IMG/VR virus record: IMGVR_UViG_3300028558_000791
Coordinates: 310,001-374,000 of that record
Direction: 5' to 3' (one strand)
DNA length: 64,000 nucleotides
Position numbers and translations under genes: made by a program. The notes beneath the pieces are model-generated. The model searched no databases. It saw only the letters and a program-made list of their open reading frames with translations, and was not told the DNA's origin. Positions 19,524-40,837 of this stretch are shown piece after piece (the first letter of the stretch is position 1; each line of letters starts with the position of its first letter).

Positions 19524-19805
19524 ATGGATGCGTGGAAGAAGCCTGTTGTAGATCCGATCCAGGATATTATGGTTGTAGACGGTTACATACGAATCATTCG
19601 TCAAAATATAGATGTGGCCTCTCAAAAATTCGAATACAGTATTTTCTTTGTTGGTGAAGCAAATTTTTTGAGAGAGCATTTCAAAAGTTTTAGGCCAGAA
19701 TACGAAGATCATACAACTAAACTTGAATTTGAAAGTATTCAGGCCGCTAAAGATTATATTGACAAATTCATTGAGCGATTAGACAATCTCATAGCATTCA
19801 TCTAA
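19524..19805 (+). CDS. Hypothetical protein with C-terminal RLDNLIAFI tag
   Basis: Fills the gap between GT2 and Fpg; start uncertain (track start 19377 overlaps the upstream gene). Confidence 0.55.
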   Translation: MDAWKKPVVDPIQDIMVVDGYIRIIRQNIDVASQKFEYSIFFVGEANFLREHFKSFRPEYEDHTTKLEFESIQAAKDYIDKFIERLDNLIAFI

Positions 19806-19821
19806 TAGGAGTATATGTGTT

Positions 19822-20658
19822 ATGCCGGAAGGCCCCGAAGTTAAACTCAGTGCAGATTTGATTAGACCATTAGTTGTTGGAAAGAAAGTTATCAATGCTT
19901 TCCCAGGAAAGAATAGTAGATATGCTGGTAGTAACCCAGAAGGATTTGCTAAGTTTTTAGATTCTCTTTCTGAAGTGGAAGTAAGAGTAACTGAGATAAA
20001 TATTGTAGGTAAGTTTATGTACTGGAAGTTTAGTAATGAGTGGTATCTCATGAATACTTTTGGTATGAGTGGACAATGGTCTGCGGAGGCTGGTAAACAT
20101 CCTAGTTTTGGATTCTACTTTAGTGAAAATTGGCCTAATATTGAGTCTACTATGTACTTCAATGACCCGCGCCATTTCGGTACCATTAAGTTTGTGAATT
20201 CCAAGAAAGAGCTAGAGAAAAAACTTCAGGAATTAGGCTGGGATCCCTTGTCGATGCCCCTTGACAAAAGCCTAAAGTGGCTTACATTTCAGCTATCAAA
20301 AAGCAGTAAATCCATTGCGGAAGCGTTGATGGACCAAGGCTTATTTTCAGGCGTTGGAAACTATATTAGGGCCGAAGCGTTATATGCATGTAAGATTTCC
20401 CCGTGGCGCAAAGCTAATCAACTTTCCCAGGATGAGGTCAAAACTTTGTGCCAAGCTATCGTTGATGTAATGCAAGAGTCATATCAACAACAAGGTGCTA
20501 CCATTCATACTTACAAGACTGCGTATGGCGAAGAAGGTAAGTATTCAGGTTTCTTTAAAGTATACGGTAAAGCAAAAGACCCATTAGGCAATAAGATAAT
20601 CAAACAACAGACACCAGATAAAAGAACTATTCACTGGTGTCCTGACATTCAAGTATAA
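19822..20658 (+). CDS. Fpg/Nei-family DNA glycosylase/AP lyase
   Basis: N-terminal MPEGPEV, FGMSG, DPRHFG, H2TH GVGNYIRAEAL, C-terminal RTIHWCPDIQ. Confidence 0.9.
   Translation: MPEGPEVKLSADLIRPLVVGKKVINAFPGKNSRYAGSNPEGFAKFLDSLSEVEVRVTEINIVGKFMYWKFSNEWYLMNTFGMSGQWSAEAGKHPSFGFYFSENWPNIESTMYFNDPRHFGTIKFVNSKKELEKKLQELGWDPLSMPLDKSLKWLTFQLSKSSKSIAEALMDQGLFSGVGNYIRAEALYACKISPWRKANQLSQDEVKTLCQAIVDVMQESYQQQGATIHTYKTAYGEEGKYSGFFKVYGKAKDPLGNKIIKQQTPDKRTIHWCPDIQV
20261..20288 (+). promoter_or_regulatory. Internal sigma70-like promoter TTGACA-N16-TACATT
   Basis: Same geometry as the promoters at 16760 and 51413 but inside the Fpg gene. Confidence 0.35.
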
Positions 20659-20668
20659 GGTATCATTC

Positions 20669-21661
20669 ATGTCTCCTACATTAATCAAAATCCTCGTAGC
20701 CGTTGGTGCTGTATTGACCATTGGCGTTGTAGGTCTAATCATCTACAATCAAATTCAAATCAGAAAACAGAATGATGCTATTCAATCTCAATTAGTTGAA
20801 CAACGATCATTAGTTGACGGCATTGTAAGAAGCCAGAATCAATATGCCACCAAGAGTGATGTTGATAAGTTTGCTAAGGACAATGGCATTAACCTAAACG
20901 CTATTCAATCTGATCTGGACAAACTACATGGAGAGATTAGCGCCGTAAACGTAGCCATCTCTACCAGCCAAGGCCAGCATGGCACCAACATTCCAAGCGT
21001 CAAGCCTACTCCAAGCAACCCAGTCAACCCTAACCCGGTGGACCCAGCCAACCCGGATCCTTTTGGTTATCAAAAATCTCAGCAGAATTTGGCTTTGAAT
21101 GAAGACTTCGGCACAATCAAGGTTCCGTTTGGCAGTGTCGGCTTCTCTGCTTGGCAGAAAGACCCATGGAGCGTGGATGTTAATCCAAGACAATACAACG
21201 TAGACACGGTTGTTGGGACTGACGAGAACCAGAGACAGTATTTCTACAATAAGTTTAGCGTAGTCACTGGAGATAAAACGTACGAAATCCCAATCAAGAC
21301 AGCTACTACTAAGCAAGAGTTCCCGACTGCTAAGTGGAGTTGGTGGAATCCAAGACTCCTAATGGGTCTGGATGGTGGCGTCAACATCACTAATGTCAAA
21401 GGAGAATTCACGCCACATGTTGGCGTTGGCATTATGTCCTATGGACAGTATAAAACTACGCCAGACTTCTCAATCTTAGAGGTGGGTGTAGGGTATGGAA
21501 CCATAAACAAGACTGGTCAAGTAGTGGTTACACCAGTTGCCTACAACATAGGTAAGAATCTGTTCTCACCACTGATGAACAACACATATATTGGCCCAAG
21601 CCTTTCAATTGGCACTGACGGTTCCATTGGAGCTGGAGCGGGCGTAAGGGTAGGTTTTTGA
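20669..21661 (+). CDS. Membrane-anchored protein: N-terminal TM helix, coiled coil, C-terminal beta-strand domain ending in Phe
   Basis: ILVAVGAVLTIGVVGLIIY TM; heptad region; Pro/Asn linker; amphipathic strands ending GAGAGVRVGF. Confidence 0.6.
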   Translation: MSPTLIKILVAVGAVLTIGVVGLIIYNQIQIRKQNDAIQSQLVEQRSLVDGIVRSQNQYATKSDVDKFAKDNGINLNAIQSDLDKLHGEISAVNVAISTSQGQHGTNIPSVKPTPSNPVNPNPVDPANPDPFGYQKSQQNLALNEDFGTIKVPFGSVGFSAWQKDPWSVDVNPRQYNVDTVVGTDENQRQYFYNKFSVVTGDKTYEIPIKTATTKQEFPTAKWSWWNPRLLMGLDGGVNITNVKGEFTPHVGVGIMSYGQYKTTPDFSILEVGVGYGTINKTGQVVVTPVAYNIGKNLFSPLMNNTYIGPSLSIGTDGSIGAGAGVRVGF

Positions 21662-22500
21662 TGTTACATATTCTCACTTTGACATGGAACGCTGCTGATA
21701 AGCTATCTAAATTGCATGAGACTCTTATGCCTGCTCTAGAAGGTATTGATTTCAAATGGTGGATCAAGGATAACGCTTCTAAAGATGATACAGTAGCCGT
21801 GGCCTCTACATGGGGAGATAAGGTAACTGTTATCCCTTACAAGGATAACCGCCAGAACTTCTCTGAAGGCTGCAACTTTCTCTTCAATGAGGCAAAACCC
21901 GCTGATGATGATTATGTCATGTTACTAAACAATGATATCGTTTTCAATGATACTGATTCTATCAAGAAGATGTTGGCCATTATTGAAAATGATGATTCAG
22001 TAGGAATGGTAGGCGCCCGCTTACTGTACACCAACACTGATCAGCTTCAGCACTGTGGCGTGGTATTCAATCCAACCTATAAGACTCCAATGCATTTCCG
22101 TGCAGGTCAGAAATCAGACAATGATGCCGAGCGAGATCGCGAGTTCCAAGTAGTCACTGGCGCCGTTTGTATCACCAAAGCAGAATACTTCCGTAAGGCT
22201 AATACGACCACTAAGTCTGGTATTGCTGGAATGGATGAGAGCTATCATTGGGCTTTTGATGATGTGGATTTGTGTCTGTCCATTAAGTACAATCTAAAGA
22301 AGAAAATTGTGTATTGTGGTAGGACCAATATCTTCCATGAAGAAAGTGCATCTCTCAAGAAGAACCAAGTCAATAAACTATTTTTGACTCACAACCTACA
22401 ATATCTTTTTGGAAAATGGCAGGGCCGCTACGATATAGATCAGGAAGCCTATGCTAAGGATTCCAGGCTCAACCTTTATCGAGGTCCTAGTGTCGGTTGA
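21658..22500 (+). CDS. Glycosyltransferase, GT2 family
   Basis: IKDNASKD, NFSEGCN, LLNND, VTGAVC, FDDVDLCL, HEESAS motifs. Confidence 0.85.
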   Translation: MMLHILTLTWNAADKLSKLHETLMPALEGIDFKWWIKDNASKDDTVAVASTWGDKVTVIPYKDNRQNFSEGCNFLFNEAKPADDDYVMLLNNDIVFNDTDSIKKMLAIIENDDSVGMVGARLLYTNTDQLQHCGVVFNPTYKTPMHFRAGQKSDNDAERDREFQVVTGAVCITKAEYFRKANTTTKSGIAGMDESYHWAFDDVDLCLSIKYNLKKKIVYCGRTNIFHEESASLKKNQVNKLFLTHNLQYLFGKWQGRYDIDQEAYAKDSRLNLYRGPSVG

Positions 22501-22711
22501 GTTAGGGTTGTACCAGCACTCCAAGGGCGGCCTTTACTGGGTAATTGGTATTGGAAAACACTCAGAGACTTTAGAGGAGATGGTTGTATATCAAAAGTAT
22601 TATGGCCCTGACGATCTTGGTGAAATATGGGTTCGACCTTTAAGCATGTGGTCTGAAGAAGTGAAACCTGGAGTTCCTCGTTTCCGAAAAGTAGATGATG
22701 TTGTGAAATAA
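22490..22711 (+). CDS. DUF1653-like protein
   Basis: GLYQHSKGGLYWVIGIGKHSETLEEMVVY...WVRPLSMW; probable GTG start at 22490. Confidence 0.75.
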   Translation: MSVELGLYQHSKGGLYWVIGIGKHSETLEEMVVYQKYYGPDDLGEIWVRPLSMWSEEVKPGVPRFRKVDDVVK

Positions 22712-22718
22712 GGTGTAA

Positions 22719-23693
22719 ATGAAAAAAGTTCTTGTAACAGGTACATGTGGTTTTATCTTTAGTAACTTTATTCGTAAAGCCATCTACGACCAAAATCAGA
22801 GAAGATCTCAAGATAAGGATTACACTTTTGTTAGCGTAGACCGTGTTACGGCTAATGCCATCAATTCTATGTATTGGAACAAGAACCATATCTTCCACCC
22901 GGCTGACATTCGTGACCAACATGTCATGGATGTAATCTTCCAATTTGAGAAGCCAGATATTGTTATCCATGGAGCGGCTGAGACCTTCGTGGATACATCG
23001 TTGAAAGACCCGAACTCTTTCGTAACCTCTAATGTGCTAGGCACCCAAGTTATCATTAACTCGTGCCTCAAACACAAAGTGGAGAGGATGATTTACATTT
23101 CCACAGATGAAGTGTATGGTCACCTTACCAGCGAGTCAGAGGCCGCCTGGAAGGAAGATGCGCCCCTCAATCCTAGAAACCCCTATTCAGCCTCTAAGGC
23201 TGCCGGGGAGCTAATGGTCAGAGCAGCCCACCAGACTCATGGATTAATTTATAACATTACTAGAAGCTCCAACTGCTATGGTCCCCGCCAGCTTCCTGAA
23301 AAGCTGGTGCCCAAGGCAATAAAGTGTGTTATGGATGGACAGAAAATCCCAATTTACGGTCAAGGTCAACAGATTAGAGATTGGACCTATGTAGCAGATA
23401 ATTGTACTGCCATAATGACAGTTTTAAACCAAGGTAAACCTAATGAGGTTTACAATATTTCCGCTAATCAGGAATTTACCAATATTGAAACTATTAACTT
23501 AGTTTGTAATGCCATGGGTAAGGGTCACGACTTGATATCCTTCATTCCAGATCCGAGAACCGGGCATGATTTTAGGTACGCGATTGATACTAGTAAAATT
23601 CGAGAGCTGGGCTGGAAGCCAACTTACAAATTTAAGGATGGCATCAGAGATACAGTACAGTGGTATCTAGATAACCAATGGTTTTTGAAGTGA
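22719..23693 (+). CDS. rmlB: dTDP-glucose 4,6-dehydratase (RmlB/RfbB-like SDR)
   Basis: VTGTCGFIFSNF, AAETFVD, ISTDEVYG, YSASKAA, NCYGPRQLPEKL, IRDW, GHDFRYAID. Confidence 0.9.
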   Translation: MKKVLVTGTCGFIFSNFIRKAIYDQNQRRSQDKDYTFVSVDRVTANAINSMYWNKNHIFHPADIRDQHVMDVIFQFEKPDIVIHGAAETFVDTSLKDPNSFVTSNVLGTQVIINSCLKHKVERMIYISTDEVYGHLTSESEAAWKEDAPLNPRNPYSASKAAGELMVRAAHQTHGLIYNITRSSNCYGPRQLPEKLVPKAIKCVMDGQKIPIYGQGQQIRDWTYVADNCTAIMTVLNQGKPNEVYNISANQEFTNIETINLVCNAMGKGHDLISFIPDPRTGHDFRYAIDTSKIRELGWKPTYKFKDGIRDTVQWYLDNQWFLK

Positions 23694-23718
23694 TATAGTA
23701 GGACGCACAGGAGAAATA

Positions 23719-25077
23719 ATGCCCGCAACGTCAGTAACCGAACAAGATCAAAAAGAAGAAGTCATGGATGATGTATCCAATGAAGAAGTAAAGCCGTCTG
23801 AAACAGTAGACGTCAGCAAATTAGCAGCACTAAAGGCCAAGAGCCAAGCCAAGCAAGAGGAGAGTAAGATGGCAGCAAAGATTGTGTCAAAGAAAGACAG
23901 AAGTATCACATTAGGAGTTCTAGGATCAGGCCAGGCCGGTTCCAGAATTGCTGAAGCTTTCTACAAGCTCGGCTATGATGCTGTCGCAGTCAACACTGCC
24001 ATGCAGGATCTCAAGTTTATTGATATCCCAGATTCTAACAAGCTGCTGCTTGAGTACGGTTTGGGTGGAGCTGCCAAGGAAACCGAAATTGGTCGTGCGG
24101 CTGCTGAAGCTCATCGTGGAGAGATTCTCCAATTGGTTAATGAGAAGCTACAAAACTCGCAGGTCAACGTACTTTGCTTGAGTTTGGGTGGCGGTTCTGG
24201 TGCAGGTTCTTGCGATACTATGGTAGACATTCTATCATCTCTAGGTAAGCCACTTGTCGTTGTCACTGTACTTCCAATGGATACAGAAGACGCACAGACC
24301 AAGGCTAACGCATTAGAAACTCTTTCTAAGCTAGCTAAGGCAACACAAACTAAGAAGGTCAATAACCTAATTGTAGTAGACAATGCTAAGATTGAAGCTA
24401 TCTACCACAATATTAGCCAGGTTGATTTCTACGGCATTGCCAATAAAGCCATCGTAGAACCAATTGATATCTTCAATACACTTTCATCCTTACCATCAGC
24501 AGTCAAGGGACTAGATCCAATGGAATGGGGAAAGCTCTTTACAGATGGTGAGGGTTTAACTGTCTATGGTGAATTGACCATTGAAAACTTTGCCGAAGAT
24601 ACTGCTATTGCAGAAGCTGTCGTCAATAACTTGAATGGTAACTTGCTAGCTGGCGGTTTCGATCTAAAGCAGTCTAGATATGTTGGCGTTATCATTGCTG
24701 CCAACAAAGAAGTCTGGTCCAAAATCCCAAGCTCCAGTATTACTTATGCTATGGCCATGGTTAATGATCAATGTGGATCACCAAAGGGCGTATTCAAAGG
24801 TATCTACACTATAGAGACCCCAGACCCAGTAGTCAAGGTATACTCTATGTTTACTGGTCTCGGCTTACCAGAATCACGTATCACTCAACTAAAGAAGGAT
24901 ACGGCAGCCATGCAACAGAATGTCAAGGGTAAGGATGAGCAGCGCAACCTATCTCTCAATCTAGACACCGGTACTAATGAAACTGTCTCTGCTGCCCAAA
25001 AGGTTAAAGAGAAGATTGCGGCTAAGTCTTCTGCTTTCGGTAAGTTGGTTGGTGGTGTTGTTGACAGGAGAAAATAA
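23719..25077 (+). CDS. Tubulin/FtsZ-superfamily GTPase (PhuZ/TubZ/CetZ-like)
   Basis: GSGQAGSRIA, AVNTA, tubulin signature LGGGSGAG, VVDNAK. Confidence 0.85.
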   Translation: MPATSVTEQDQKEEVMDDVSNEEVKPSETVDVSKLAALKAKSQAKQEESKMAAKIVSKKDRSITLGVLGSGQAGSRIAEAFYKLGYDAVAVNTAMQDLKFIDIPDSNKLLLEYGLGGAAKETEIGRAAAEAHRGEILQLVNEKLQNSQVNVLCLSLGGGSGAGSCDTMVDILSSLGKPLVVVTVLPMDTEDAQTKANALETLSKLAKATQTKKVNNLIVVDNAKIEAIYHNISQVDFYGIANKAIVEPIDIFNTLSSLPSAVKGLDPMEWGKLFTDGEGLTVYGELTIENFAEDTAIAEAVVNNLNGNLLAGGFDLKQSRYVGVIIAANKEVWSKIPSSSITYAMAMVNDQCGSPKGVFKGIYTIETPDPVVKVYSMFTGLGLPESRITQLKKDTAAMQQNVKGKDEQRNLSLNLDTGTNETVSAAQKVKEKIAAKSSAFGKLVGGVVDRRK

Positions 25078-25310
25078 TGGATGTTCTAGATCACACAGAA
25101 ACATCTTCTCCAACTCTAATGAAAGATATTTTTACCAATCTCATTGGAGAAGATGTTTCTGTTTACATCAGTGGCAGCAGTAGTACTACTACGTTGAATG
25201 GACAGTTACAGTCTTACAATGGGTTTGTTTTACATCTCACTTCCAATGGTGGTAGGTATCATTCTTACATACCGGCCGATAAAGTATCCGCAATCTGTAG
25301 TGGTAAATAA
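25077..25310 (+). CDS. Sm/Hfq-like fold small protein
   Basis: LIGEDVSVYI...LNGQLQSYNGFVLHL...YIPADKVSAI matches the Sm1/Sm2 pattern. Confidence 0.55.
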   Translation: MDVLDHTETSSPTLMKDIFTNLIGEDVSVYISGSSSTTTLNGQLQSYNGFVLHLTSNGGRYHSYIPADKVSAICSGK

Positions 25311-25609
25311 TGGAAACTGATATTCTAAAACACTTCATTGGTAAGGATGTAGAAATTCTTGTCTCTGGTGTTTGGATTGAAGGTCATATGCAGCCTATTG
25401 CAAAAGGGGTTGTAACTTTAGTGCCTATAGGAGAGGCTAGTTCTTTTTATGGGCCAGCCGCCTGTAAGACAGAAGTGATTGTAGCAATTAGACAAGTGAT
25501 TCGTTCTGGTGTAAAGTTGGCCGAGCCAATACCAGAGATAAATCAAGACCCACCGATTAGATCAAGCATGGAGTCAATTACTCCAGGACAACGTTTCAAG
25601 AGGAAATAA
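25310..25609 (+). CDS. Sm/Hfq-like fold small protein
   Basis: LKHFIGKDVEILVSGVWIEGHM...VVTL...VIVAIR. Confidence 0.45.
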   Translation: METDILKHFIGKDVEILVSGVWIEGHMQPIAKGVVTLVPIGEASSFYGPAACKTEVIVAIRQVIRSGVKLAEPIPEINQDPPIRSSMESITPGQRFKRK

Positions 25610-25896
25610 TGAAAAGACTAAAGAGAGTAACCAAGCGCGAGAAGAAAGCAATGCTCAAATTCCTTAAGGACATGGAGGCTAACCAACCCAAATCCGATGT
25701 TGCTGTTAAGCCTAAGACTTCCAAAGTGAAGGTTGTAATTACTCTAACTAAATTCTTGGAGAACCAAGCTAAGAAGAAGTTAGCTAAGGCAATTCATCGT
25801 GAAGAGAAGCGTAATCTCAAAGCAGCAGCTAAGGGACAAAAGAAGCCAAATCATACGCATGACCATGACCACGAACATGAACATGAGCACAAATGA
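25609..25896 (+). CDS. Lys-rich basic protein with His/acidic tail
   Basis: Very basic body; ends HTHDHDHEHEHEHK. Confidence 0.6.
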   Translation: MKRLKRVTKREKKAMLKFLKDMEANQPKSDVAVKPKTSKVKVVITLTKFLENQAKKKLAKAIHREEKRNLKAAAKGQKKPNHTHDHDHEHEHEHK

Positions 25897-26147
25897 GATA
25901 TGAGATTCTAACCAACTATTTCGGGCAGCATGTAGAGGTTGGTATTATCAACAAGATTTTTAGCGGTATCCTAAGGCAAGCCGAATCAGATGGTGGTTTG
26001 AATGATATTGTAGAAATCGAACCAGGTAACGATTATGCTAGAAAACGCTATGGTTCCGCTATCTTAGATGTGAATACAATCACTTCTATCAGGGCAATTA
26101 AACCGCATACAGATGAAGATGACGACTGTTGTGAAGACAGTCCATAA
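25893..26147 (+). CDS. Sm/Hfq-like fold small protein
   Basis: LTNYFGQHVEVGIINKIFSGIL...IVEI...ILDVNTITSIR. Confidence 0.45.
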   Translation: MRYEILTNYFGQHVEVGIINKIFSGILRQAESDGGLNDIVEIEPGNDYARKRYGSAILDVNTITSIRAIKPHTDEDDDCCEDSP

Positions 26148-26168
26148 CTAAAGTAATTGGCGGTATGT

Positions 26169-27008: not shown

Positions 27009-27071
27009 AACTCAGCGATTCTGAGATGTAGATTTGTCGAGAAAAAGGTACCAGTTATATATGGTATCTGT

Positions 27072-31796: not shown

Positions 31797-31970
31797 ATGC
31801 AGGACAAAGTAGTGGCGGAAGCCGTCAGAATAGAGTACGAAGAAAAGACCGGAAAGCTGTATATTGTTTTCGAGGTCAAGGACGAAAAGTACAAACAAGA
31901 CATCAAAGCTAATTGGACAAAAGATATAGAATATAAACTAGTAGATAAGTTTTTAGTGCAAGGTGACTAA
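31797..31970 (+). CDS. Small hypothetical protein (57 aa, not in the ORF track)
   Basis: MQDKVVAEAVRIEYEEKTGKLYIVFEV...; GAGG RBS; stop overlaps the next ATG. Confidence 0.65.
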   Translation: MQDKVVAEAVRIEYEEKTGKLYIVFEVKDEKYKQDIKANWTKDIEYKLVDKFLVQGD

Positions 31971-32317
31971 TGAACATAATCCAGATAGAAAATTTGAGGG
32001 CCCTAATCGATTTACAGTATCCTCACATTTGTATATACGAAGGGGACTTTAGACAATTTATGAATATACCTTGGGAGGCAAAACGCTTCTATCCGCTTCG
32101 AACACGAGGTGGCTGGTATGAGAAAAAGGGGTTCTTTCACAATGGTAGAACAACAGTCTGGGCAACTCTTAGCATGAAACAGAATCACATTAAGATTGCA
32201 GACAAAGAGATTCCAACTCTAACTTCAGGCGCCCACTGGACAAAGGATTTTTCTTTTGAAGAAGCAGGAAGTGCCGATGTCATTCGAAGGATGATGAAAC
32301 TAAAGGCTTTCTGGTAA
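31970..32317 (+). CDS. Hypothetical protein with C-terminal RMMKLKAFW tag
   Basis: Translationally coupled ORF. Confidence 0.65.
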   Translation: MNIIQIENLRALIDLQYPHICIYEGDFRQFMNIPWEAKRFYPLRTRGGWYEKKGFFHNGRTTVWATLSMKQNHIKIADKEIPTLTSGAHWTKDFSFEEAGSADVIRRMMKLKAFW

Positions 32318-33273: not shown

Positions 33274-33305
33274 CTATTACTTTCGACTAAAGTGAGAAGA
33301 ATAAA

Positions 33306-33935: not shown

Positions 33936-33992
33936 CCGTCTACTGTATCTACAATATAGGGACTTTAACTTAATTCCTCTAAAGGATGGATT

Positions 33993-36503
33993 ATGCAGGG
34001 ATACACTTATTCTCAGGTTTATGAAGCGTCAATTGAATACTTTGCTGGTGATGAATTTGCTGCTAAGGTTTTCGTTGACAAATATGCTTTGCAAGACCTG
34101 AGCGGAACTTACTTAGAACTTACTCCAGCGGCAATGCATCGCCGTTTGGCCAAGGAGTTTGCACGCATTGAACAAAACTATCCAAACCCTCTTGATGAGG
34201 AGGTAATTTTTTCATTGCTAGATCATTACAAATATATTGTACCACAAGGCAGTCCTATGTCTGCTATTGGTAATCCTTATCAGATGCAGAGTTTATCGAA
34301 TTGCTTCGTGATTCAAGGCGTGCATTCAGATAAGTTTGATTCCTATGGTGGCATCATGCTTGCTGATCAAGAACTAGCCCAAATCATGAAACGTAGGGGT
34401 GGTGTAGGATTAGACATTTCTGGCATCCGACCTAAAGATGTAATCACTAACAACGCAGCTAAGACCACTGATGGTCTTGGCGTTTTCATGGAACGTTTTT
34501 CTAATACCTGCCGTGAGGTAGCTCAGAATGGTAGACGTGGTGCAGAAATGATCACCATCTCTATCAATCATCCTGAAATTGAAACATTCATCAATATCAA
34601 GCGTAATCTCACTAAGGTAACTGGAGCTAATATTTCCATTCGTCTTAATGATGACTTTATGCAAGCAGTTAAAGACGATCAAGGATACACACTACGTTGG
34701 CCAGTAGAATCCTCTCCAGAAACAGCAAGAGTAACAAAAACAGTTAGAGCCAGAGACATATGGGATCAAATCATAGACTCCGCTTGGACATCCGCCGAGC
34801 CGGGTCTTTTGTTTTGGGATACTGTCAAGAAGCATACTCCATCTGACATCTATCATGAGTTTGGTCATAACTCCATCTCCACTAATCCATGTGGTGAGAT
34901 TGTATTACCGGCCTATGATGCTTGTCGTTTGCTCGTTCTTAATCTAGTTTCTTACGTCAATAACCCATTTACCAAAGATGCCGTATTCGATTTTAAGAAA
35001 TTCCATCGGCACACGTTGATAGCTCAGCGTCTAATGGACGATATCATTGATTTAGAGATTGAGTGCATCGATAGAATCCTTGCCAAGATCAAAGCTGACC
35101 CTGAGCCGGACGAAGTCAAGGCAGTCGAACTGGCCTTATGGCACAAGATTCGTAACATGAACACCTCTGGCCGTAGAACCGGTTTAGGCATCACTGCGCT
35201 CGGCGATACACTAGCTATGCTTGGCATCAAATATGGCGCTCCAGAATCTATTGAAGTTACTCGTAAGATTTATCGTGCTTTGGCCGTAGGCTCACACACA
35301 TCTTCTTGCATCATGGCAAAGGAACGTGGAGCATTCCCAATCTTCAATTATGATCTGGAAAAAGATCACAAGTACCTCAATGCTATCTTTGACGATTGCA
35401 CTCGGGAAGTCAGGCGGATGTGGAAGAAGACTGGTAGAAGAAACATTGCCAATACTACTACTGCACCAGCGGGCTCAGTGTCTTCACAGACTCAAACGAC
35501 CTCTGGTATTGAGCCGGCATTTATGCTTTCCTATGTTCGTCGTAAGAAACACAATCCATCTGATAAGAATGCTCGTGTAGACTTCGTAGATGCAATGGGT
35601 GACCAGTGGCAGGAGTTTACTGTGTACCACCATGGTGTCAAGCTATGGATGGAAGCAACTGGTGAAACCGACATCACTAAGTCACCATACTATGGCGCTA
35701 CCTCTAATGAAATTGATTGGGTTGCCTCCGTAGATATGCAAGCTGCTGCTCAAGACTCAATTGATCATAGTATCAGCAAGACTTGTAACTTACCAGAAGA
35801 TATCTCTAAGGATATCGTATCTCAGGTCTATATGAGGGCTTGGGAAAAGGGATGTAAGGGTTTCACTGTCTATCGCGATAAATGTCGTGATGGTGTATTG
35901 ATTAGCTCATCTAAGTCTAATAGTAAGAAAGCTCAAGATGGTAGGCCATTAGAGATTGAAACACACATGGCACCAAAGCGCCCCCTTGAACTACCTTGTG
36001 ATATTAAGAAGGCTAAGGTCCAGGGTGAACAGTGGACTCTTTTTGTGGGAATGTTCAACGGTAAACCATACGAAATATTTGGAGGTTTGTCTAAGTATGT
36101 AGACATTCCAAACAAATACAAAATGGGTAGAGTTGTCAAGAATGGTAAAGTAGAAGATATTACCACTTACAATTTGATTATTGGTGAAGGTGAAGATCAG
36201 ATGTTGATCAAAGACATTGCAAACGTTTTTGAGAATGCTAACTTTGGAGCTTTCACTCGTACTATTTCTCTAGCTTTACGTCATGGTACTCCGGTACAAT
36301 ATGTAGTAGAGCAACTTCAGAAAGATAAGTATTCTGATGTAACGTCTTTTTCTAAAATAGCAGCTAGAGTTCTAAAGAGCTATATTGCCGATGGAACTAA
36401 ATCAACTGCTGAGAAAAAATGTCCTAAATGCCATATGGAAAACAACTTTGCATATCAGGAAAAATGCCTGACTTGTATGGGTTGCGGATGGAGTAAGTGC
36501 TAA
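33993..36503 (+). CDS. nrdJ: Class II (adenosylcobalamin-dependent) ribonucleotide reductase
   Basis: SNCF, GRRGA, EPG, TNPCGE, APAGSVS, TSGIEP, SISKT, KGFTVYRD; C-terminal TSCPD-like domain and CPKC...CMGCGWSKC; no beta subunit nearby. Confidence 0.85.
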   Translation: MQGYTYSQVYEASIEYFAGDEFAAKVFVDKYALQDLSGTYLELTPAAMHRRLAKEFARIEQNYPNPLDEEVIFSLLDHYKYIVPQGSPMSAIGNPYQMQSLSNCFVIQGVHSDKFDSYGGIMLADQELAQIMKRRGGVGLDISGIRPKDVITNNAAKTTDGLGVFMERFSNTCREVAQNGRRGAEMITISINHPEIETFINIKRNLTKVTGANISIRLNDDFMQAVKDDQGYTLRWPVESSPETARVTKTVRARDIWDQIIDSAWTSAEPGLLFWDTVKKHTPSDIYHEFGHNSISTNPCGEIVLPAYDACRLLVLNLVSYVNNPFTKDAVFDFKKFHRHTLIAQRLMDDIIDLEIECIDRILAKIKADPEPDEVKAVELALWHKIRNMNTSGRRTGLGITALGDTLAMLGIKYGAPESIEVTRKIYRALAVGSHTSSCIMAKERGAFPIFNYDLEKDHKYLNAIFDDCTREVRRMWKKTGRRNIANTTTAPAGSVSSQTQTTSGIEPAFMLSYVRRKKHNPSDKNARVDFVDAMGDQWQEFTVYHHGVKLWMEATGETDITKSPYYGATSNEIDWVASVDMQAAAQDSIDHSISKTCNLPEDISKDIVSQVYMRAWEKGCKGFTVYRDKCRDGVLISSSKSNSKKAQDGRPLEIETHMAPKRPLELPCDIKKAKVQGEQWTLFVGMFNGKPYEIFGGLSKYVDIPNKYKMGRVVKNGKVEDITTYNLIIGEGEDQMLIKDIANVFENANFGAFTRTISLALRHGTPVQYVVEQLQKDKYSDVTSFSKIAARVLKSYIADGTKSTAEKKCPKCHMENNFAYQEKCLTCMGCGWSKC

Positions 36504-36505
36504 TA

Positions 36506-36521
36506 TCAATTAACTAGCATT
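36506..36521 (+). promoter_or_regulatory. Putative phage promoter motif TCAATTAACTAGCATT
   Basis: Intergenic, 8 nt before ATG 36530. Confidence 0.3.
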
Positions 36522-36529
36522 GGATAAAG

Positions 36530-36931
36530 ATGAAAGGCACGATACTTCTCGATTATAGCGAGAATACCCACCAGATTGAAGACGAAGAAAAAGCTAGATT
36601 CCTTAAAGGAATTCTAGAAATGTGCTTCAATGACGCTGAAAACGTGAAAACCCAAATTCAATCAATTTGGACTTCGGATGGGGTATTACCAGCTTCCCAA
36701 AAAGTAAAATTGAGAGGTATCCTCGCTACTTACGGCATACAGGTTATAGATGATCTTGACGGCCACATGCAGATATACTTAGAAAATGAGTTAATTGCTG
36801 AATGGCACAAGTGTACCTATAAACTTAAAAGAGACCTGCGTGCTATAGATCCGCGAAAGCGTGTTTATCTTGAAATGGAAGTTAATTGTTGGTCAGTTTT
36901 TGACGACAAAGAGGAACAAGAGATAGAATGA
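36530..36931 (+). CDS. Hypothetical protein
   Basis: Clean ORF coupled to the PhoH gene. Confidence 0.65.
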   Translation: MKGTILLDYSENTHQIEDEEKARFLKGILEMCFNDAENVKTQIQSIWTSDGVLPASQKVKLRGILATYGIQVIDDLDGHMQIYLENELIAEWHKCTYKLKRDLRAIDPRKRVYLEMEVNCWSVFDDKEEQEIE

Positions 36932-38238
36932 GAAAAACTTACGTACTTGATACTAGTACCTTGATCACCGATCCCGTAGCTTACAAATCATTTATGCACA
37001 GCGATGTGGTAATTCCAATCGCTGTTCTTAATGAACTTGACAAATTAAAGAAAGGTTCAAGTGAAGCTGGCAGAAATGCCAGAGTCGCAATTAGATTACT
37101 AGATGAAATCTGCGATAGAGGCGATATTAGCATGGGTATTTTGCTTGATGATGATATCATGCTCAGTGTAGATGCTACCTATCTTGATTGTTCTCAGCCA
37201 CCATATCTTGGATTCGGCGATCCAAATTATGGTGATACTCAAATCCTTGCCTGCTTACAGTCTCACTGGCTCAGACACCCAGAGCGTGATGTTGCATTAA
37301 TTAGTAACGACATCAACTTGCGTGTAAAAGCCAAGTCACGTTCTATTGATGCGGAATCACATGATGGTGGTGAGTATTCACTTAGCGATCTTTACTCTGG
37401 CGCCTCGATAGTCAATCATGAGGATGCTGGTGTGGCCTTGCTCCAAGATGGTAAGATTGATCCGCGTGTCTTTGGCATTAGACTCAATATGCACGAGTGT
37501 GTATTGTTCCAGGCTGACAACGGTGATGGTCTTTGCATGGGTCGTAAGGTAGCGAATGACTGTGTCAAACTAATCCGTAAACAATACCCTTGGAATATCT
37601 CTGCCCGTAATAAGGAACAGAGCTTCGCCATGGATCTAATTATGGATAGAAACGTTGACCTAGTTACCCTAATTGGTAAGGCTGGTACCGGTAAAAGCTT
37701 AATCGTATTAGCAACTGCTCTAGAATTAGTTCTTAGCAGAAAAGAATATGACAAATTCATTATCTATCGTCCAATTCAGCCAGTTGGTAATGACATTGGT
37801 TATTTGCCAGGAACTATGGAAGAAAAGTTGGCCCCATGGTTTAGTGCCATTATGGACAATTTCGAAATGCTCTTTACCACCAAAGCTGGTGGAGACTGGA
37901 AGCGTGAGTTAGAAATGTACCAGAAAAAGGGCAGAATTGAGATGGAAGCTATTACCTATATTCGTGGTCGTAGTATTCCGAATGCTATTATCCTAGTCGA
38001 TGAGTGCCAAAACTTGAGCAAAGAGGATGTAAAAACTATCCTAACTCGTGCTGGAGAAGGTACAAAAATCATCTTGACAGGTGATATAGAGCAGATTGAT
38101 AATTCATTGCTAGATGCTACCAGCAACGGATTAACACATGTTATCGAGAAGTTTAAGGATTCTGAGTTGGCTGGTCACGTTACCTTCACTCAGGGTGAGC
38201 GTAGCAAGTTGGCAACTAAAGCCGCTGAAATTTTGTAA
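36928..38238 (+). CDS. phoH: PIN-PhoH (PhoH2-like) protein
   Basis: N-terminal PIN VLDTS...ELDKLK...SNDINLR; GKAGTGKS, GYLPG, RGRS, DECQN, GDIEQID. Confidence 0.9.
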   Translation: MRKTYVLDTSTLITDPVAYKSFMHSDVVIPIAVLNELDKLKKGSSEAGRNARVAIRLLDEICDRGDISMGILLDDDIMLSVDATYLDCSQPPYLGFGDPNYGDTQILACLQSHWLRHPERDVALISNDINLRVKAKSRSIDAESHDGGEYSLSDLYSGASIVNHEDAGVALLQDGKIDPRVFGIRLNMHECVLFQADNGDGLCMGRKVANDCVKLIRKQYPWNISARNKEQSFAMDLIMDRNVDLVTLIGKAGTGKSLIVLATALELVLSRKEYDKFIIYRPIQPVGNDIGYLPGTMEEKLAPWFSAIMDNFEMLFTTKAGGDWKRELEMYQKKGRIEMEAITYIRGRSIPNAIILVDECQNLSKEDVKTILTRAGEGTKIILTGDIEQIDNSLLDATSNGLTHVIEKFKDSELAGHVTFTQGERSKLATKAAEIL

Positions 38239-38247
38239 GGAGTTTTC

Positions 38248-38625
38248 ATGACTAAGAAGAAGAATTCTCAACCAGGAGCACCTGAAGTAGTATTGACGCC
38301 AGATGAATCCTCGGCTGAAGCACCTACTACCAATGTGAATGGCGTCCCACTTGGTTCTGTAGTTCCAATGACAGTGCCAGGGGCCCCAAGCAGACTAACC
38401 GATATGGATAGAATGGCCTTGGAACTAGCTAGACAACAAAGACTAACCACTTTAGCTGAAGCTAGAGCTGCCGTTGCTCAGACTGAAAAATCTGAGTTAG
38501 CCTATAAGTATGTGGTCCTCCAATTGTATATGAAGTACGGCCTAACCGATGCTGATGCCATTAGCGAAGCTGGTGATATTATCAAGGGTGGCGCACTACC
38601 TCAGAACCAACCAAAGCAGCAGTAA
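38248..38625 (+). CDS. Hypothetical protein
   Basis: AGGAG RBS; helical C-terminal half. Confidence 0.65.
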   Translation: MTKKKNSQPGAPEVVLTPDESSAEAPTTNVNGVPLGSVVPMTVPGAPSRLTDMDRMALELARQQRLTTLAEARAAVAQTEKSELAYKYVVLQLYMKYGLTDADAISEAGDIIKGGALPQNQPKQQ

Positions 38626-38909
38626 TGCAATTTGAAGAGCTTATTGGTCTGATTAAGATTAGAGAATACGTTGTCAATTCTACCGCTCTTCCTACTATCG
38701 ATAGGAAGACGGTAAATGAGTTGAATGGTATTCTCCTATTATTGGACAAAAAGATTATCGGACTCTTGACAGGCGCGGACTTCAAGGATTACATTGGCTA
38801 CCATGACGTGCAAGCTGCCAAAGAAGCAGCGGCCCGTATCACGAACATCTATTCGGGCATTGATAATAAGAACGCTGCCCTTCACAAACACATTAAAAAC
38901 CAGAAGTAA
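38625..38909 (+). CDS. Hypothetical protein
   Basis: Coupled ORF. Confidence 0.6.
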   Translation: MQFEELIGLIKIREYVVNSTALPTIDRKTVNELNGILLLLDKKIIGLLTGADFKDYIGYHDVQAAKEAAARITNIYSGIDNKNAALHKHIKNQK

Positions 38910-38919
38910 TAGGTAACAT

Positions 38920-39723
38920 ATGAGAATGAACGCTCCCAAAGAGCTGTTCAGCGAAAACAGCTTGGTTCGTCTAAAAGACAAGGACTGGTTGGAGAAACAA
39001 AGGGTCGCCGGCAGAATTGCTGCCGAGACCCTTTTGCTTTTGGAGGGTTTCGTCAAAGGACGAACTTTCCATTCTCTTCTAGCTCTTAATGAAGTAGCAG
39101 AACATTACATCACTAAGAATGGTGGAACTGCAACCTTCAAAGGCTACAAAGGATTCCCTGCCGGTGTCTGTATCTCTGTCAACAAGGAAATGGTCCATGG
39201 TATCCCCAAGGATATTGTCCTAGATGATGGTGATATTGTCAGCTTTGATTTAGGCGTGACTTACCAAGGTGCTATTGCTGATACGGCTATCACCTGTATC
39301 TTCGGCACTCCCAAATCAGAAAGACATGTTACCCTTGTTAAAGCTACTGAAGAGTCTTTGATGAAAGGCATTGAAGCCATTCAAGTGGGCAGTCGTCTAG
39401 GTGTAATTGGTCAGGCCATTTCCAAACACGCAAAGACCTATGGGTTTGGCGTCATCAATAACTATGGTGGGCACGGATTAGATTGGGACGTTCCCCATGC
39501 TCCGCCCTTCGTGGAAAACAAATCAGATGAGACTCGTGGAATTAGAATTCAACCAGGATTAGCCATTGCTATAGAGCCGATGCTCGTGCTTGGTTCTACC
39601 AGTACCACCACACTGAGTGATGGTTGGACTGTGGTAACACCTGATTTGAGTGCTCATTTTGAACACTCAGTCTATGTTCATGAAGACCATGTCGAAATCA
39701 TTACCGATAGGAGCAAACTATGA
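38920..39723 (+). CDS. map: Methionine aminopeptidase, type I
   Basis: CISVN...HGIP, DLGV, DTAIT, GGHG, AIEPM, AHFEHSV metal-binding motifs. Confidence 0.92.
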   Translation: MRMNAPKELFSENSLVRLKDKDWLEKQRVAGRIAAETLLLLEGFVKGRTFHSLLALNEVAEHYITKNGGTATFKGYKGFPAGVCISVNKEMVHGIPKDIVLDDGDIVSFDLGVTYQGAIADTAITCIFGTPKSERHVTLVKATEESLMKGIEAIQVGSRLGVIGQAISKHAKTYGFGVINNYGGHGLDWDVPHAPPFVENKSDETRGIRIQPGLAIAIEPMLVLGSTSTTTLSDGWTVVTPDLSAHFEHSVYVHEDHVEIITDRSKL

Positions 39724-39989
39724 TTACTAAAGAGTCAGTGGTTGCGCAACTTAATAGACTGTTACAGTTAGATAGAAATCTAACTGAAAAACTGATAGAT
39801 ACTCGTTATCCGGTTACTAATGAATACGCAGACTCAGAAGAGTTTATTTGTATGGTAGATGATCCTAACAATCCAGTAGCTGGTATGCTTGGTGTACTCA
39901 ATGGACTGCTAAATGAAGATATTCCAATTGCAGCGGTCTATGATGAGGATATGAAACTAATCATGTTTGTACTAGCTGAAAGGCCCTAA
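39720..39989 (+). CDS. Hypothetical protein
   Basis: Coupled ORF; GMLGVLNGL motif. Confidence 0.6.
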   Translation: MITKESVVAQLNRLLQLDRNLTEKLIDTRYPVTNEYADSEEFICMVDDPNNPVAGMLGVLNGLLNEDIPIAAVYDEDMKLIMFVLAERP

Positions 39990-40192
39990 TGTTTATCGTA
40001 GATGTACTAATGCCTTGGGATGATATTCCTAACATGAAGGTAAACTATCAAGAAACCTTTGCAGGTGCATTAAGTGCGGCCGAAAGAATCGTACAAGAGT
40101 CTGGCGGAGCTAGGCGTATTGAGATTTTTGAAGCCGATGAAAAGCACTCTAAGAATAAAAGGCTGATTGCCTCTCTAAGGACAATCAGATGA
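39989..40192 (+). CDS. Hypothetical protein
   Basis: Coupled ORF. Confidence 0.55.
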   Translation: MFIVDVLMPWDDIPNMKVNYQETFAGALSAAERIVQESGGARRIEIFEADEKHSKNKRLIASLRTIR

Positions 40193-40395
40193 ATGAGGGA
40201 GTCATTGAAGGCAACATCCGTATAATTGCTGATGGTCTTGATAGAGACTTGCCAGAAAATGAAATCATTGAGGCGTATATTGCCGTTGGTTTCGATATGG
40301 CAGATGTTACGCTTCTATTAGCGGCGGCCAGGCTATTACTTGGTGATCGTAAAAGTGCTCAGGCAGTCCGCGGCACATTCAGGAGAGTTACATGA
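40189..40395 (+). CDS. Hypothetical protein
   Basis: Coupled ORF. Confidence 0.55.
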   Translation: MNEGVIEGNIRIIADGLDRDLPENEIIEAYIAVGFDMADVTLLLAAARLLLGDRKSAQAVRGTFRRVT

Positions 40396-40565
40396 AAATC
40401 ACATTCGATGATAAGAGCTATATTGAGTGTATCAAGTCAGCTAATCCTGGCAAGATAATCTTTACTATCTCTGCTAAGGATCACACTGACCCACTCAAGA
40501 AAATTACTAACGCAGTTGAGATTACTGTCGAAGAATTCAAGAAACTAATTTCTGATGTAACATGA
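40392..40565 (+). CDS. Small hypothetical protein (57 aa, not in the ORF track)
   Basis: MKITFDDKSYIECIKSANPGKIIFTIS...; AGGAG RBS; ATGA overlaps at both ends. Confidence 0.65.
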   Translation: MKITFDDKSYIECIKSANPGKIIFTISAKDHTDPLKKITNAVEITVEEFKKLISDVT

Positions 40566-40837
40566 TTGAAAATCGCTCCATAAGACTAGAAGACTATCTC
40601 AAGCAATACGACCTTGAGAAGAGTATTAGTTTTATGAGGGCGATTTTTCATTTCAGTTACACAAAAACTCGTGGTGATGATGGTGTTTATATTTGGTTTG
40701 GCGATAAAGATTGGGGTACTAATTCCAAATGCTTTATAGCTCATGTCGGCTATTGTTCATTCATCTTTATTGATTATACAGAAGATCAAGTGATCGACAA
40801 GTATGATCGATATTACAAACTAAAGGCATTTACATGA
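40562..40837 (+). CDS. Hypothetical protein with C-terminal RYYKLKAFT tag
   Basis: Coupled ORF. Confidence 0.6.
   Translation: MIENRSIRLEDYLKQYDLEKSISFMRAIFHFSYTKTRGDDGVYIWFGDKDWGTNSKCFIAHVGYCSFIFIDYTEDQVIDKYDRYYKLKAFT

What the first reader, a model, noticed from the sequence alone, without database searches (positions are those of the whole stretch)
19779..40837. Shared C-terminal tag R-x-x-[KN]-L-[KI]-A-F-x-stop on three unrelated small proteins
Seen: ORF 19524..19805 ends RLDNLIAFI*, ORF 31970..32317 ends RMMKLKAFW*, and ORF 40562..40837 ends RYYKLKAFT*. The bodies share no visible similarity, and each gene is slotted between conserved genes. The motif sits at the same distance from the stop codon in all three. 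Inference: a C-terminal address label for a family of accessory or effector proteins. It could be a protease degron (cf. C-terminal ClpX signals), a capsid-packaging or injection signal, or a docking peptide for one partner.
Basis: partly seen in the sequence, partly recalled or inferred. Interest (0 to 1): 0.7.

Follow-up and report, generated by a model that had tools for sequence, protein, structure and literature searches.

The report
Shared C-terminal tail in megaphage proteins
Three small genes in this 481-kb phage genome really do end in the same short peptide. That ending marks dozens to over a hundred otherwise dissimilar small proteins in one clade of giant phages, and it most likely serves as a common docking surface whose partner is still unknown.

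Summary
The three window ORFs end RLDNLIAFI, RMMKLKAFW and RYYKLKAFT. The whole 480,838-bp virus genome holds 15 such proteins, against about 0.01 expected. A looser format, [KR]-h-x-x-h-x-x-F-x-stop, marks 38 of 713 genes here and 82 of 758 in a 448-kb relative.

Codons vary synonymously, so selection acts on the peptide. The Phe is always penultimate, and shifted registers sit at background. The conserved part is about 11 residues at the end of a confidently predicted C-terminal helix.

The bodies fall into about 50 sequence clusters, and profile comparisons align only the tails. The same tail ends MORN-like repeat proteins, Zn-ribbon proteins and at least three other families. A sister tail (…K-T-Y-L-h-F-S) ends a tandem array of about 24–28 Zn-ribbon genes.

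A scan of 2.9 million viral contigs found the motif essentially only in relatives of this clade. It was absent from 185,000 cellular species genomes, and no Pfam, PHROG or fold match exists.

Best reading (0.45): a constant, terminus-anchored helical face that docks hypervariable accessory proteins onto one unidentified partner. Main rival (0.3): a purely structural helix inherited within one hyper-diverged paralog superfamily. Degron, dimerisation and packaging remain untested.

The parts
19434..19805 (+). It ends ...ERLDNLIAFI and lies between a family-2 glycosyltransferase and an Fpg-type DNA glycosylase.
   Evidence: The ortholog P0056 ends ...RLNKLLVFI.
19776..19802 (+). Tail of gene 1: R-L-D-N-L-I-A-F-I, with the stop at 19803-19805. 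This is a weaker, generic-class version (Ile instead of Lys at -4).
31970..32317 (+). Tail-bearing gene 2 (115 aa), two genes downstream of DnaB. It has 37 orthologs that all keep ...K-A-F-W. The AlphaFold model is an alpha/beta body plus a C-terminal helix at residues 101-114.
32288..32314 (+). Tail of gene 2: R-M-M-K-L-K-A-F-W, with the stop at 32315-32317. This is the canonical form.
40562..40837 (+). Tail-bearing gene 3 (91 aa), downstream of the methionine aminopeptidase gene and overlapping the next gene's start (ATGA). It has 16 orthologs. The AlphaFold model (pLDDT 89) is beta-alpha-alpha-beta4-alpha, with the C-terminal helix at residues 74-90.
40808..40834 (+). Tail of gene 3: R-Y-Y-K-L-K-A-F-T, with the stop at 40835-40837. 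Orthologs end L-[KR]-A-F-[LIT].

Best explanation
The three ORFs are genuine genes. They belong to lineage-specific, massively expanded sets of small (about 90-145 aa), soluble accessory proteins in one clade of 350-500-kb megaphages.

What they share is the end of a C-terminal alpha-helix: h(-11)-x-[RK](-9)-h(-8)-x-[KN](-6)-L(-5)-K(-4)-A(-3)-F(-2)-x(-1)-COOH.

I propose that this is a constant interaction module. On a helical wheel, the identity-conserved residues (-9, -6, -5, -3, -2) line one face and, together with the nearby free carboxylate, dock onto a single common partner. The partner could be a phage-clade-specific protein or a host hub. The hydrophobic-but-variable residues (-11, -8, -7, -1) lie on the opposite face and pack against each family's own body. 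The variable bodies (MORN-like hairpins, Zn-ribbons, novel alpha/beta domains) would supply target specificity, as in adaptor families with a constant docking box.

Shown: the motif, its enrichment, protein-level selection, strict terminal register, clade restriction, body diversity, helical state and clustering.

Inferred: the two-face reading, the existence of a common partner and the adaptor logic.
For: Enrichment and register:
- 15 HMM members against about 0.01 expected.
- 38 of 713 and 82 of 758 genes carry the generic tail.
- Phe at -2 is enriched 2.3-fold and 4.2-fold, while -1, -3 and -4 are at background. Shifted-register controls give 0-8.

Protein-level selection:
- Conserved positions use several synonymous codons.

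Conservation is confined to the last ~11 residues:
- Positions -9 and -6 were not used for ascertainment yet carry 1-2.4 bits.

Bodies are unrelated at the available sensitivity:
- 66 proteins fall into 50 clusters.
- hhalign aligns only 11-30 terminal columns between the five KLKAF-type family profiles.

Combinatorial pattern of bodies and tails:
- The same tail sits on MORN-like, Zn-ribbon, A2-, A3- and W1-type bodies.
- Zn-ribbon bodies carry either tail type.
- The cultured-phage Atu_ph07 MORN-like homolog has the helix start but not the K-L-K-A-F-x end.

The tail outlasts the body:
- Distant homologs at E about 1e-5 to 6e-3 still end L-K-A-F-W.
- Residue -1 is fixed within a family (W in all 32 aligned members of the gene-2 family A2) but differs between families. 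That fits body-facing packing for -1 and partner-facing conservation for the other positions.

Clade restriction:
- Genuine K-L-K-A-F-W ends in 2.9 million viral contigs lie almost only in relatives of this clade.
- None occur in 185,579 cellular species genomes.
- Distant clade members G003 and G004 have about one each.
Against: - No partner was identified. The phage lacks proteasome, PDZ, S41 protease, beta-clamp and ClpX zinc-finger genes.
- Both AlphaFold models place the helix confidently as part of a compact domain, so it is not an exposed linear peptide. I could not inspect coordinates to verify that the conserved face is solvent-exposed.
- The two models share the same order of secondary-structure elements. 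Carriers also have a narrow size range and lie in tandem arrays. Common descent with a structurally conserved terminal helix could therefore explain much of the pattern without any partner.
- Within ortholog sets the tail is not the most conserved window (rank 7 of 107 and 30 of 83).
- No tail-less homolog of a window protein was found, so modularity is not proven for these three.
Confidence: 0.45

Rival explanations
1. The tail is a purely structural relic. All carriers descend by tandem duplication from one ancestral small domain (beta-hairpins capped by a C-terminal helix). The bodies diverged beyond recognition, while the helix end stayed because it is the folding core. The constant stop position is inherited and held by genome compaction. 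There is no common partner.
For: - Carriers lie in tandem arrays: 26 of 38 and 45 of 82 have a tagged neighbour, against 3.9 and 16.8 expected.
- The length distribution is narrow and none has a membrane-like segment.
- Both AlphaFold models have the same element order, beta-alpha-alpha-beta-beta-beta-(beta)-alpha, with a confident terminal helix.
- A preceding strand, turn and N-cap can be aligned over about 30 columns between some families.
- MORN-like hairpin signatures appear in several bodies.
- G002 shows a continuum of tail variants.
Against: - Profile-profile comparison never extends into the bodies.
- The structural neighbours of the two models are disjoint and weak.
- Charged positions (K/R at -9, K/N at -6, K at -4) are conserved in identity across families whose bodies differ. 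That is unusual for a helix that only packs on different bodies.
- Clearly different N-terminal architectures (Zn-ribbon, MORN repeats) carry the identical tail.
- The Atu_ph07 MORN-like homolog lacks the motif.
Confidence: 0.3
2. The tail is a C-terminal degradation or tethering signal read by an AAA+ protease. A host ClpX-type unfoldase working with host ClpP or the phage's own ClpP1/ClpP2 would time the removal of early accessory proteins, or would use them as adaptors that drag host targets to the protease.
For: - The phage and most relatives encode two adjacent ClpP paralogs.
- ClpX is known to read C-terminal motifs and to bind the C-terminal SspB XB peptide through its N-domain (PMC3983244, PMC12373786).
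- The register L(-5)-basic(-4)-small hydrophobic(-3)-hydrophobic(-2)-x(-1) resembles the SspB tail L-R-V-V-K. That sequence is recalled from memory and was not verified here.
- The motif has a strict terminal position.
Against: - The tail does not match ClpX C-motif 2 (R/H-x-K/R-K-hydrophobic) or C-motif 1 (LAA).
- XB works irrespective of position and lies in a disordered tail (PMC12373786), whereas this motif is helical and register-locked.
- The phage has no ClpX or ClpX zinc finger.
- G004 has the ClpP pair but almost no motif, and G003 lacks both ClpP and the motif, so the co-occurrence is only loose.
Confidence: 0.12
3. The tail is a self- or hetero-association helix. Two tails would pair antiparallel around L(-5), with R/K(-9) of one chain contacting the terminal carboxylate of the other. 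This would make homodimers, or mixed dimers among the many carriers.
For: - The geometry explains the fixed spacing between the basic residue at -9 and the C-terminus. It also explains the small Ala at -3 and why any residue is tolerated at -1 (inference).
- A self-complementary interface would be strongly conserved in all paralogs.
Against: - The only test gave no support: the homodimer prediction of the 91-aa protein scored 0.00 against a mark of 0.42. The tool states this is not evidence against binding.
- The monomer models are already confident and compact.
Confidence: 0.08
4. The tail is a capsid-targeting or compartment-targeting signal, analogous to encapsulin cargo-loading peptides or the T4 capsid-targeting sequence. 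It would load many small proteins into the giant head for co-injection, or into an intracellular phage compartment.
For: - Terminal short helices are used as cargo signals by HK97-fold shells and microcompartments (established knowledge).
- The phage encodes a TubZ/PhuZ-like tubulin.
- The carriers are soluble accessory-type proteins.
Against: - Carriers are encoded away from the central region that holds the putative prohead protease/scaffold gene.
- No virion proteome or shell-protein data exist.
- The motif bears no sequence resemblance to known cargo peptides.
- Nothing here could test it.
Confidence: 0.05

Closest known systems
Adaptor multigene families with a constant terminal docking box (for example poxvirus ankyrin/PRANC F-box-like proteins, cellular F-box and SOCS-box proteins)
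   Same: Large, tandemly arrayed, fast-evolving virus gene families in which variable bodies are joined to one short conserved C-terminal element. In those families the element binds a single hub.
   Different: There is no sequence or structural relation. Here the element is only about 11 residues at a helix end, with a locked distance to the C-terminus, and no hub is known. Bacteria and phages lack the ubiquitin machinery those boxes recruit.
ClpX-directed C-terminal signals (ssrA-like C-motif 1, MuA-like C-motif 2) and the SspB XB tethering tail
   Same: Short basic and hydrophobic motifs at the extreme C-terminus that are read by a protease machine. The phage carries ClpP1/ClpP2. The spacing of Leu, basic and hydrophobic residues resembles L-R-V-V-K (recalled from memory).
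   Different: The tail does not fit the published C-motif consensus (PMC3983244). XB is position-independent and disordered (PMC12373786), whereas this motif is helical and register-locked. The phage has no ClpX.
HbYX motif (hydrophobic-Tyr-any-COOH) of proteasome activators and the HslU C-terminal tails
   Same: Same format: a hydrophobic residue, a penultimate aromatic residue, any last residue and a free carboxylate.
   Different: The aromatic is Phe, never Tyr. Upstream Leu, Lys and Arg are also conserved. The phage has no proteasome subunit, and HbYX tails are flexible rather than helical.
Lineage-specific expansion of about 35 Zn-ribbon proteins in Bacillus phage G (Iyer et al. 2021, PMC7824862)
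   Same: A giant phage with dozens of tandem small Zn-ribbon paralogs of unknown role (suggested transcription factors or DNA binders). G000 has a comparable array of about 24-28 genes at 403.7-417.2 kb.
   Different: A different phage lineage. That paper's searched text mentions no conserved C-terminal tail, and I did not examine the phage G proteins. Here the shared tail extends beyond the Zn-ribbon family to unrelated bodies.
MORN-like / YwqK-type hairpin-repeat proteins of phages (for example Atu_ph07 gp051)
   Same: The same repeat (…HREDGPA…NG.K.WY.NGK…) followed by a C-terminal helix starting [ST]-x-[EQ]-E-F.
   Different: The cultured-phage homolog ends …FVRLAKGKT without K-L-K-A-F-x. 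Pfam MORN models do not hit the clade's proteins. Most tail carriers in G000 are not MORN-like.
Cargo-loading or encapsulation peptides (encapsulins, microcompartments) and the T4 capsid-targeting sequence
   Same: Short terminal, often helical, peptides shared by unrelated cargo proteins.
   Different: Those peptides are linked by flexible spacers, are poorly conserved in sequence or are N-terminal and cleaved. No shell interaction could be tested here.

Membership tests
ClpX C-motif 2 degron (MuA-like) | C-terminal consensus R/H-x-K/R-K-hydrophobic (PMC3983244) | tested here: not met
   The tail consensus K/N-L-K-A-F-x has no pair of adjacent basic residues before the hydrophobic residue.
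ClpX C-motif 1 degron (ssrA-like) | C-terminal L-A-A-COOH or a close variant | tested here: not met
   The tails end A-F-x or h-F-S.
SspB-type XB tethering tail | Short C-terminal peptide in a disordered tail that binds the ClpX zinc-binding N-domain | tested here: inconclusive
   The residue-class register is similar (from memory). However, the motif is the end of a confident helix. XB is position-independent (PMC12373786), while this motif is register-locked. Binding was not tested.
HbYX proteasome-docking motif | Hydrophobic-Tyr-X-COOH on a flexible tail, with a 20S/HslV-type ring as receptor | tested here: not met
   The penultimate residue is Phe in all carriers. There is no Proteasome-family gene in G000.
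PDZ or tail-specific-protease ligand | Free C-terminal peptide bound by a PDZ domain (receptor present) | tested here: not met
   No PDZ_2 or Peptidase_S41 match in G000. Host receptors are not testable.
Sliding-clamp binding motif | Q-L-x-L-F-type peptide and a clamp to bind | tested here: not met
   No beta-clamp domain 3 in G000. The motif lacks the Gln and is helical.
MORN repeat proteins (Pfam MORN, MORN_2) | Match to the Pfam repeat models | tested here: not met
   No MORN family hit, even for the clearly repetitive members. The three window proteins have no Pfam or PHROG hit.
Single paralog superfamily (one fold) | Detectable homology or the same fold over the whole domain | tested here: inconclusive
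   hhalign aligns only the terminal 11-30 columns. The order of secondary-structure elements is the same in two models. No tool was available for direct model superposition.
DNA-level element (promoter, terminator, SD, recombination site) | Nucleotide conservation beyond what the peptide requires | tested here: not met
   Synonymous codons vary at all conserved positions. Lys(-4) is AAA in 52 of 70 cases.

The most novel reading that the evidence does not exclude
A clade of megaphages uses a terminus-anchored peptide code. About 5 to 15% of the proteome, across many unrelated small domains, would be addressed through one C-terminal helical face (…[RK]-h-x-[KN]-L-K-A-F-x-COOH and its …Y-L-h-F-S sister) to a single hub such as a protease, a compartment shell or the transcription machinery. 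That would be a phage counterpart of F-box/PRANC-type adaptor families, or of a targeting signal such as PTS1.
Probability: 0.3. Interest if true: 0.8.

Novelty: new variant of a known kind. Interest (0 to 1): 0.55.

Why it matters
If the tail is a docking code, it gives a single handle on the function of a large share of the unannotated genes in giant phages. One bait peptide could identify the hub. The variable bodies would then form a ready-made library of binders against host targets such as defence systems.

It would also be a rare case of a short linear-type motif organising a sizeable fraction of a viral proteome in prokaryotes.

Even on the conservative reading, it defines a previously unannotated, clade-diagnostic protein superfamily. 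A simple C-terminal pattern recognises its members where sequence profiles fail.

Tried and rejected
- **Chance:** rejected.
- **DNA element or Shine-Dalgarno reading:** rejected because synonymous codons vary and AAA dominates at Lys(-4).
- **Known families:** Pfam and PHROGs gave nothing for the three window proteins, 12 other G000 members, MORN-type members, Zn-ribbon members and long G002 members. The exceptions were weak Zn-ribbon hits and an M24 peptidase fusion.
- **Known folds:** no significant match for either model in Foldseek PDB, AFDB clusters, BFVD, ESM Atlas or VIA-align wide. Weak HK97 P-domain-like hits (Z<=5.9) for model 1 were not trusted.
- **ESM Atlas feature search on the tail:** uninformative.
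- **Global profile search of 1.84 billion proteins with the tail alignment:** zero hits at E<=0.001. The 37-position profile is too weak, so this is not evidence of absence.
- **Literature search for the motif strings and for phage MORN or ClpP leads:** nothing relevant.
- **Phage-encoded receptors:** proteasome, PDZ, S41, beta-clamp, ClpX zinc finger and ClpX-type AAA were all absent. Only two MoxR-like ATPases were found.
- **ClpP co-occurrence with the motif:** only loose.
- **Homodimer prediction:** no support.
- **Cellular genomes:** four pattern hits were all internal chance matches without a stop codon.
- **Tail-less homologs of the window proteins in relatives:** none found.
- **L007 (genome 125458-125688, …RKARLQAFT):** probably a false member. 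It matches phrog_2201 over its whole length and scores lowest with the tail HMM.


Full report
**1. The observation**

They end RLDNLIAFI (stop at 19803-19805), RMMKLKAFW (stop at 32315-32317) and RYYKLKAFT (stop at 40835-40837). The first gene probably starts at 19434 and encodes 123 aa. Independent gene calls and a 65%-identical ortholog have that length.

The window is bases 310001-374000 of a single 480,838-bp virus record, G000.

In a crude set of about 700 genes, R...L.AF.$ occurs 11 times against 0.009 expected, and the strict motif never occurs away from the C-terminus. A profile of the last 24 residues finds exactly 15 members at E<=4e-5, with the next ORF at 0.16. One of these 15 (genome 125458-125688) is probably a false member, because it matches phrog_2201 along its length.

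**2. Protein-level or DNA-level**

At every conserved residue the codons differ between copies: Arg uses six codons, and Leu and Ala four each. Lys(-4) is AAA in 52 of 70 cases, so an AAGG ribosome-binding reading fails. Selection therefore acts on the peptide.

**3. The register**

A generic form, [KR]-h-x-x-h-x-x-F-x-stop, matches 41 ORFs in G000 and 86 in the relative G002. The same pattern with the Phe placed 0 or 2-6 residues from the end gives 0-8.

With no other ascertainment, Phe at position -2 occurs in 71 of 713 genes (31 expected) and 153 of 758 genes (36.5 expected). Phe at -1, -3 or -4 is at background.

**4. Context**

The genome is a megaphage. It encodes a TubZ/PhuZ-like tubulin, DnaB, an SF2 helicase, ribonucleotide reductase, PhoH, Fpg and methionine aminopeptidase. 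It has no close cultured relative: megablast finds nothing, and the best DnaB hit in cultured phages is about 25% identical.

IMG/VR holds 23 related loci on contigs of up to 452 kb. A degenerate DNA pattern for L-K-A-F-x-stop gave these counts, with zero for the reversed-pattern control in every genome:

| Genome | Relation | L-K-A-F-x-stop hits |
|---|---|---|
| G002 (448 kb) | DnaB 67% identical | 36 |
| G001 | relative | 5 |
| G005 | relative | 3 |
| G003, G004 | DnaB 42-49% identical | 1 each |

I fetched G002 whole. It has about 55 ORFs matching the tail profile and 82 generic-tail genes, 11% of its genes. G004, also fetched whole, shows no de novo C-terminal enrichment.

**5. What the carriers are**

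Carriers are small, with medians of 124 aa (G000) and 102 aa (G002) and narrow interquartile ranges. None has a membrane-like segment, against 12% of other small genes. They are strongly clustered: 26 of 38 and 45 of 82 have a tagged neighbour, against 3.9 and 16.8 expected.

With the tail removed, 66 carriers from the two genomes fall into 50 clusters at phmmer 1e-3. Only one ortholog pair is shared between the two genomes.

Profile-profile comparison of the two well-sampled window families aligns only the 17 terminal columns. With enriched profiles of six families, the five KLKAF-type families align with one another only over 11-30 terminal columns, never over the bodies.

Across 116 distinct non-MORN tails, conservation is confined to about 11 residues: h(-11), [RK](-9), h(-8), [KN](-6), L, K, A, F, x. 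Positions -9 and -6 were not used for selection yet carry more than 2 bits. The F-only set shows the same pattern.

**6. Evolution**

The second window protein has 37 orthologs and the third has 16. All keep the ending.

Within these close sets the tail is conserved but not uniquely so. It ranks 7th of 107 and 30th of 83 nine-residue windows.

In more distant relatives the body of the second protein has decayed to E=1e-5 to 6e-3, while the ending is still L-K-A-F-W. No tail-less homolog was found.

The slot after the aminopeptidase gene holds four tail-bearing ORFs in L020, one of them fused in frame to the peptidase. G000 has three untagged small genes and one tagged gene there. The slot after DnaB holds a MORN-type carrier in G002 instead of the 115-aa protein.

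**7. Range**

An exact scan of 2.9 million viral contigs for K-L-K-A-F-W-TAA gave 69 loci.

Most genuine hits are small MORN-like hairpin-repeat proteins ending …[ST]-Q-x-E-F-E-R-L-M-K-L-K-A-F-W. They are often in tandem, with nine in a row in L108.

Nearly all loci with genuine carriers encode other proteins that are 40-88% identical to G000 or G002 proteins. The loci without such relatives are mostly chance matches in tiny ORFs. The motif is therefore a hallmark of this broad clade.

A specific scan of 185,579 cellular species genomes gave four hits. All were internal matches not followed by a stop codon.

In the cultured phage Atu_ph07, the MORN-like homolog ends …T-E-Q-E-F-V-R-L-A-K-G-K-T. 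The helix start is present, but the K-L-K-A-F-x end is not.

**8. A sister tail**

De novo enrichment revealed a second ending in G000, [EK]-K-h-K-[TL]-Y-h-h-F-S.

It closes most of a tandem array of about 24-28 genes at 403.7-417.2 kb. These proteins start with a C-x-x-C Zn-ribbon. Two of the 15 L-x-A-F members are simply members of this array.

Aligned on the penultimate Phe, both endings share [KR](-9), h(-8), [L/Y](-5), F(-2) and x(-1). G002 shows intermediates.

A seven-member G002 family with the canonical K-L-K-A-F ending has an N-terminal Zn-ribbon homologous to that of the array (hhalign probability 90%). So one body type carries two tail types, and one tail type sits on at least five body types.

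The sister-tail profile does not pick up K-L-K-A-F members, and it has three members in the distant G004.

**9. Structure**

| Protein | Mean pLDDT | Order of elements | Terminal helix |
|---|---|---|---|
| 115 aa (gene 2) | 85 | helix, strand, two helices, three or four strands, helix | residues 101-114 |
| 91 aa (gene 3) | 89 | strand, two helices, four strands, helix | residues 74-90 |

In both models the tail is the end of a confidently placed helix, not a floppy extension.

Neither model has a significant match in PDB, AFDB clusters, BFVD or the ESM Atlas, by Foldseek or VIA-align. I had no tool to superpose the two models or to inspect burial.

**10. Mechanism**

On a helical wheel, the identity-conserved positions (-9, -6, -5, -3, -2) fall on one face. 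The hydrophobic-but-variable positions (-11, -8, -7, -1) fall on the other. Residue -1 is fixed within a family (Trp in every aligned member of the second family) but differs between families.

The simplest reading is that the variable face packs on each family's own body. The constant face, next to the free carboxylate, would then contact something common to all carriers. This is inference.

No receptor was found. G000 lacks proteasome, PDZ, S41, beta-clamp and ClpX zinc-finger genes.

G000 does encode two adjacent ClpP paralogs. So do G001, G002, G004 and G005, but not G003. It has no ClpX, only two MoxR-like ATPases.

The motif fits neither published ClpX C-motif (PMC3983244). The SspB XB tail, which has a similar residue-class register from memory, works independently of position (PMC12373786).

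An antiparallel tail-tail pairing model would explain the fixed spacing between the basic residue at -9 and the carboxylate. It received no support from the single homodimer prediction, which scored 0.00; the tool states this is no evidence either way.

**11. Verdict**

The finding is real, statistically overwhelming and much broader than three genes.

The picture of a label appended to unrelated proteins is too simple, for three reasons:
- The element is an integral helix end.
- Carriers form tandem paralog arrays.
- Common descent of at least the terminal strand-helix unit is plausible.

I rank a constant docking face first (0.45) and a purely structural relic second (0.30). Degron or protease tethering (0.12), self-association (0.08) and packaging or compartment targeting (0.05) follow.

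I found no description of this motif in the searched literature. The nearest documented phenomenon is the expansion of about 35 Zn-ribbon proteins in Bacillus phage G (PMC7824862).

Noticed in passing
G000 genome 403718-417156 (outside the window): A tandem array of about 24-28 small N-terminal Zn-ribbon paralogs. Nearly all end [KR]-h-x-x-h-h-x-F-x, with the typical form …K-L-K-T-Y-L-h-F-S. This is a second enriched C-terminal motif in the same genome.
   Followed up: partly
G000 genome 406809-407903 (+), inside that array: A 364-aa ORF that looks like a class-I peptide chain release factor (G-G-Q motif). This is a notable gene for a phage.
   Followed up: no
G000 genome 182370-183532 (locus L128 6337-7532): Two adjacent ClpP paralogs. 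They are conserved in G001, G002, G004 and G005 and absent from G003. No phage ClpX-type unfoldase was found.
   Followed up: partly
window 23719-25077 (+): A TubZ/PhuZ-like tubulin gene (Tubulin GTPase plus TubZ-like C-terminal domain).
   Followed up: no
L020 18545-19711: Methionine aminopeptidase (M24) fused in frame to a 130-aa tail-bearing unit ending …N-L-K-A-F-L. In G000 the aminopeptidase (window 38920-39723) stops at the normal end. This is either a natural fusion or an assembly frameshift.
   Followed up: partly
L059 4664-5152 (-): Two MORN-type units in one ORF. The first unit's tail is internal (…K-L-K-A-F-F followed by more sequence), as if a stop codon had been lost.
   Followed up: no
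G000 genome 242566-246294 (+): A 1242-aa protein with a protease-like N-terminal part and long acidic Gly/Pro-rich low-complexity repeats, possibly a prohead protease/scaffold fusion. It gave a spurious-looking phmmer hit to one tail carrier.
   Followed up: no
G000 genome 417153-418777 (-): Two proteins with N-terminal signal- or membrane-like segments directly after the Zn-ribbon array. One has an H-E-I-G-H metallopeptidase motif and the other a trypsin-like G-N-S-G-G motif.
   Followed up: no
window 19434 vs 19524: The first tagged gene is called as 123 aa (start at 19434) in other assemblies, overlapping the upstream glycosyltransferase by 35 nt.
   Followed up: yes
L089, L098, L105 (IMG/VR contigs): A sub-lineage in which most MORN-type carriers end …Y-W-R-V-V-K-L-K-A-L-W, with Leu instead of Phe at -2. 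This concerted change across paralogs could reflect co-evolution with a partner or recent duplication.
   Followed up: no
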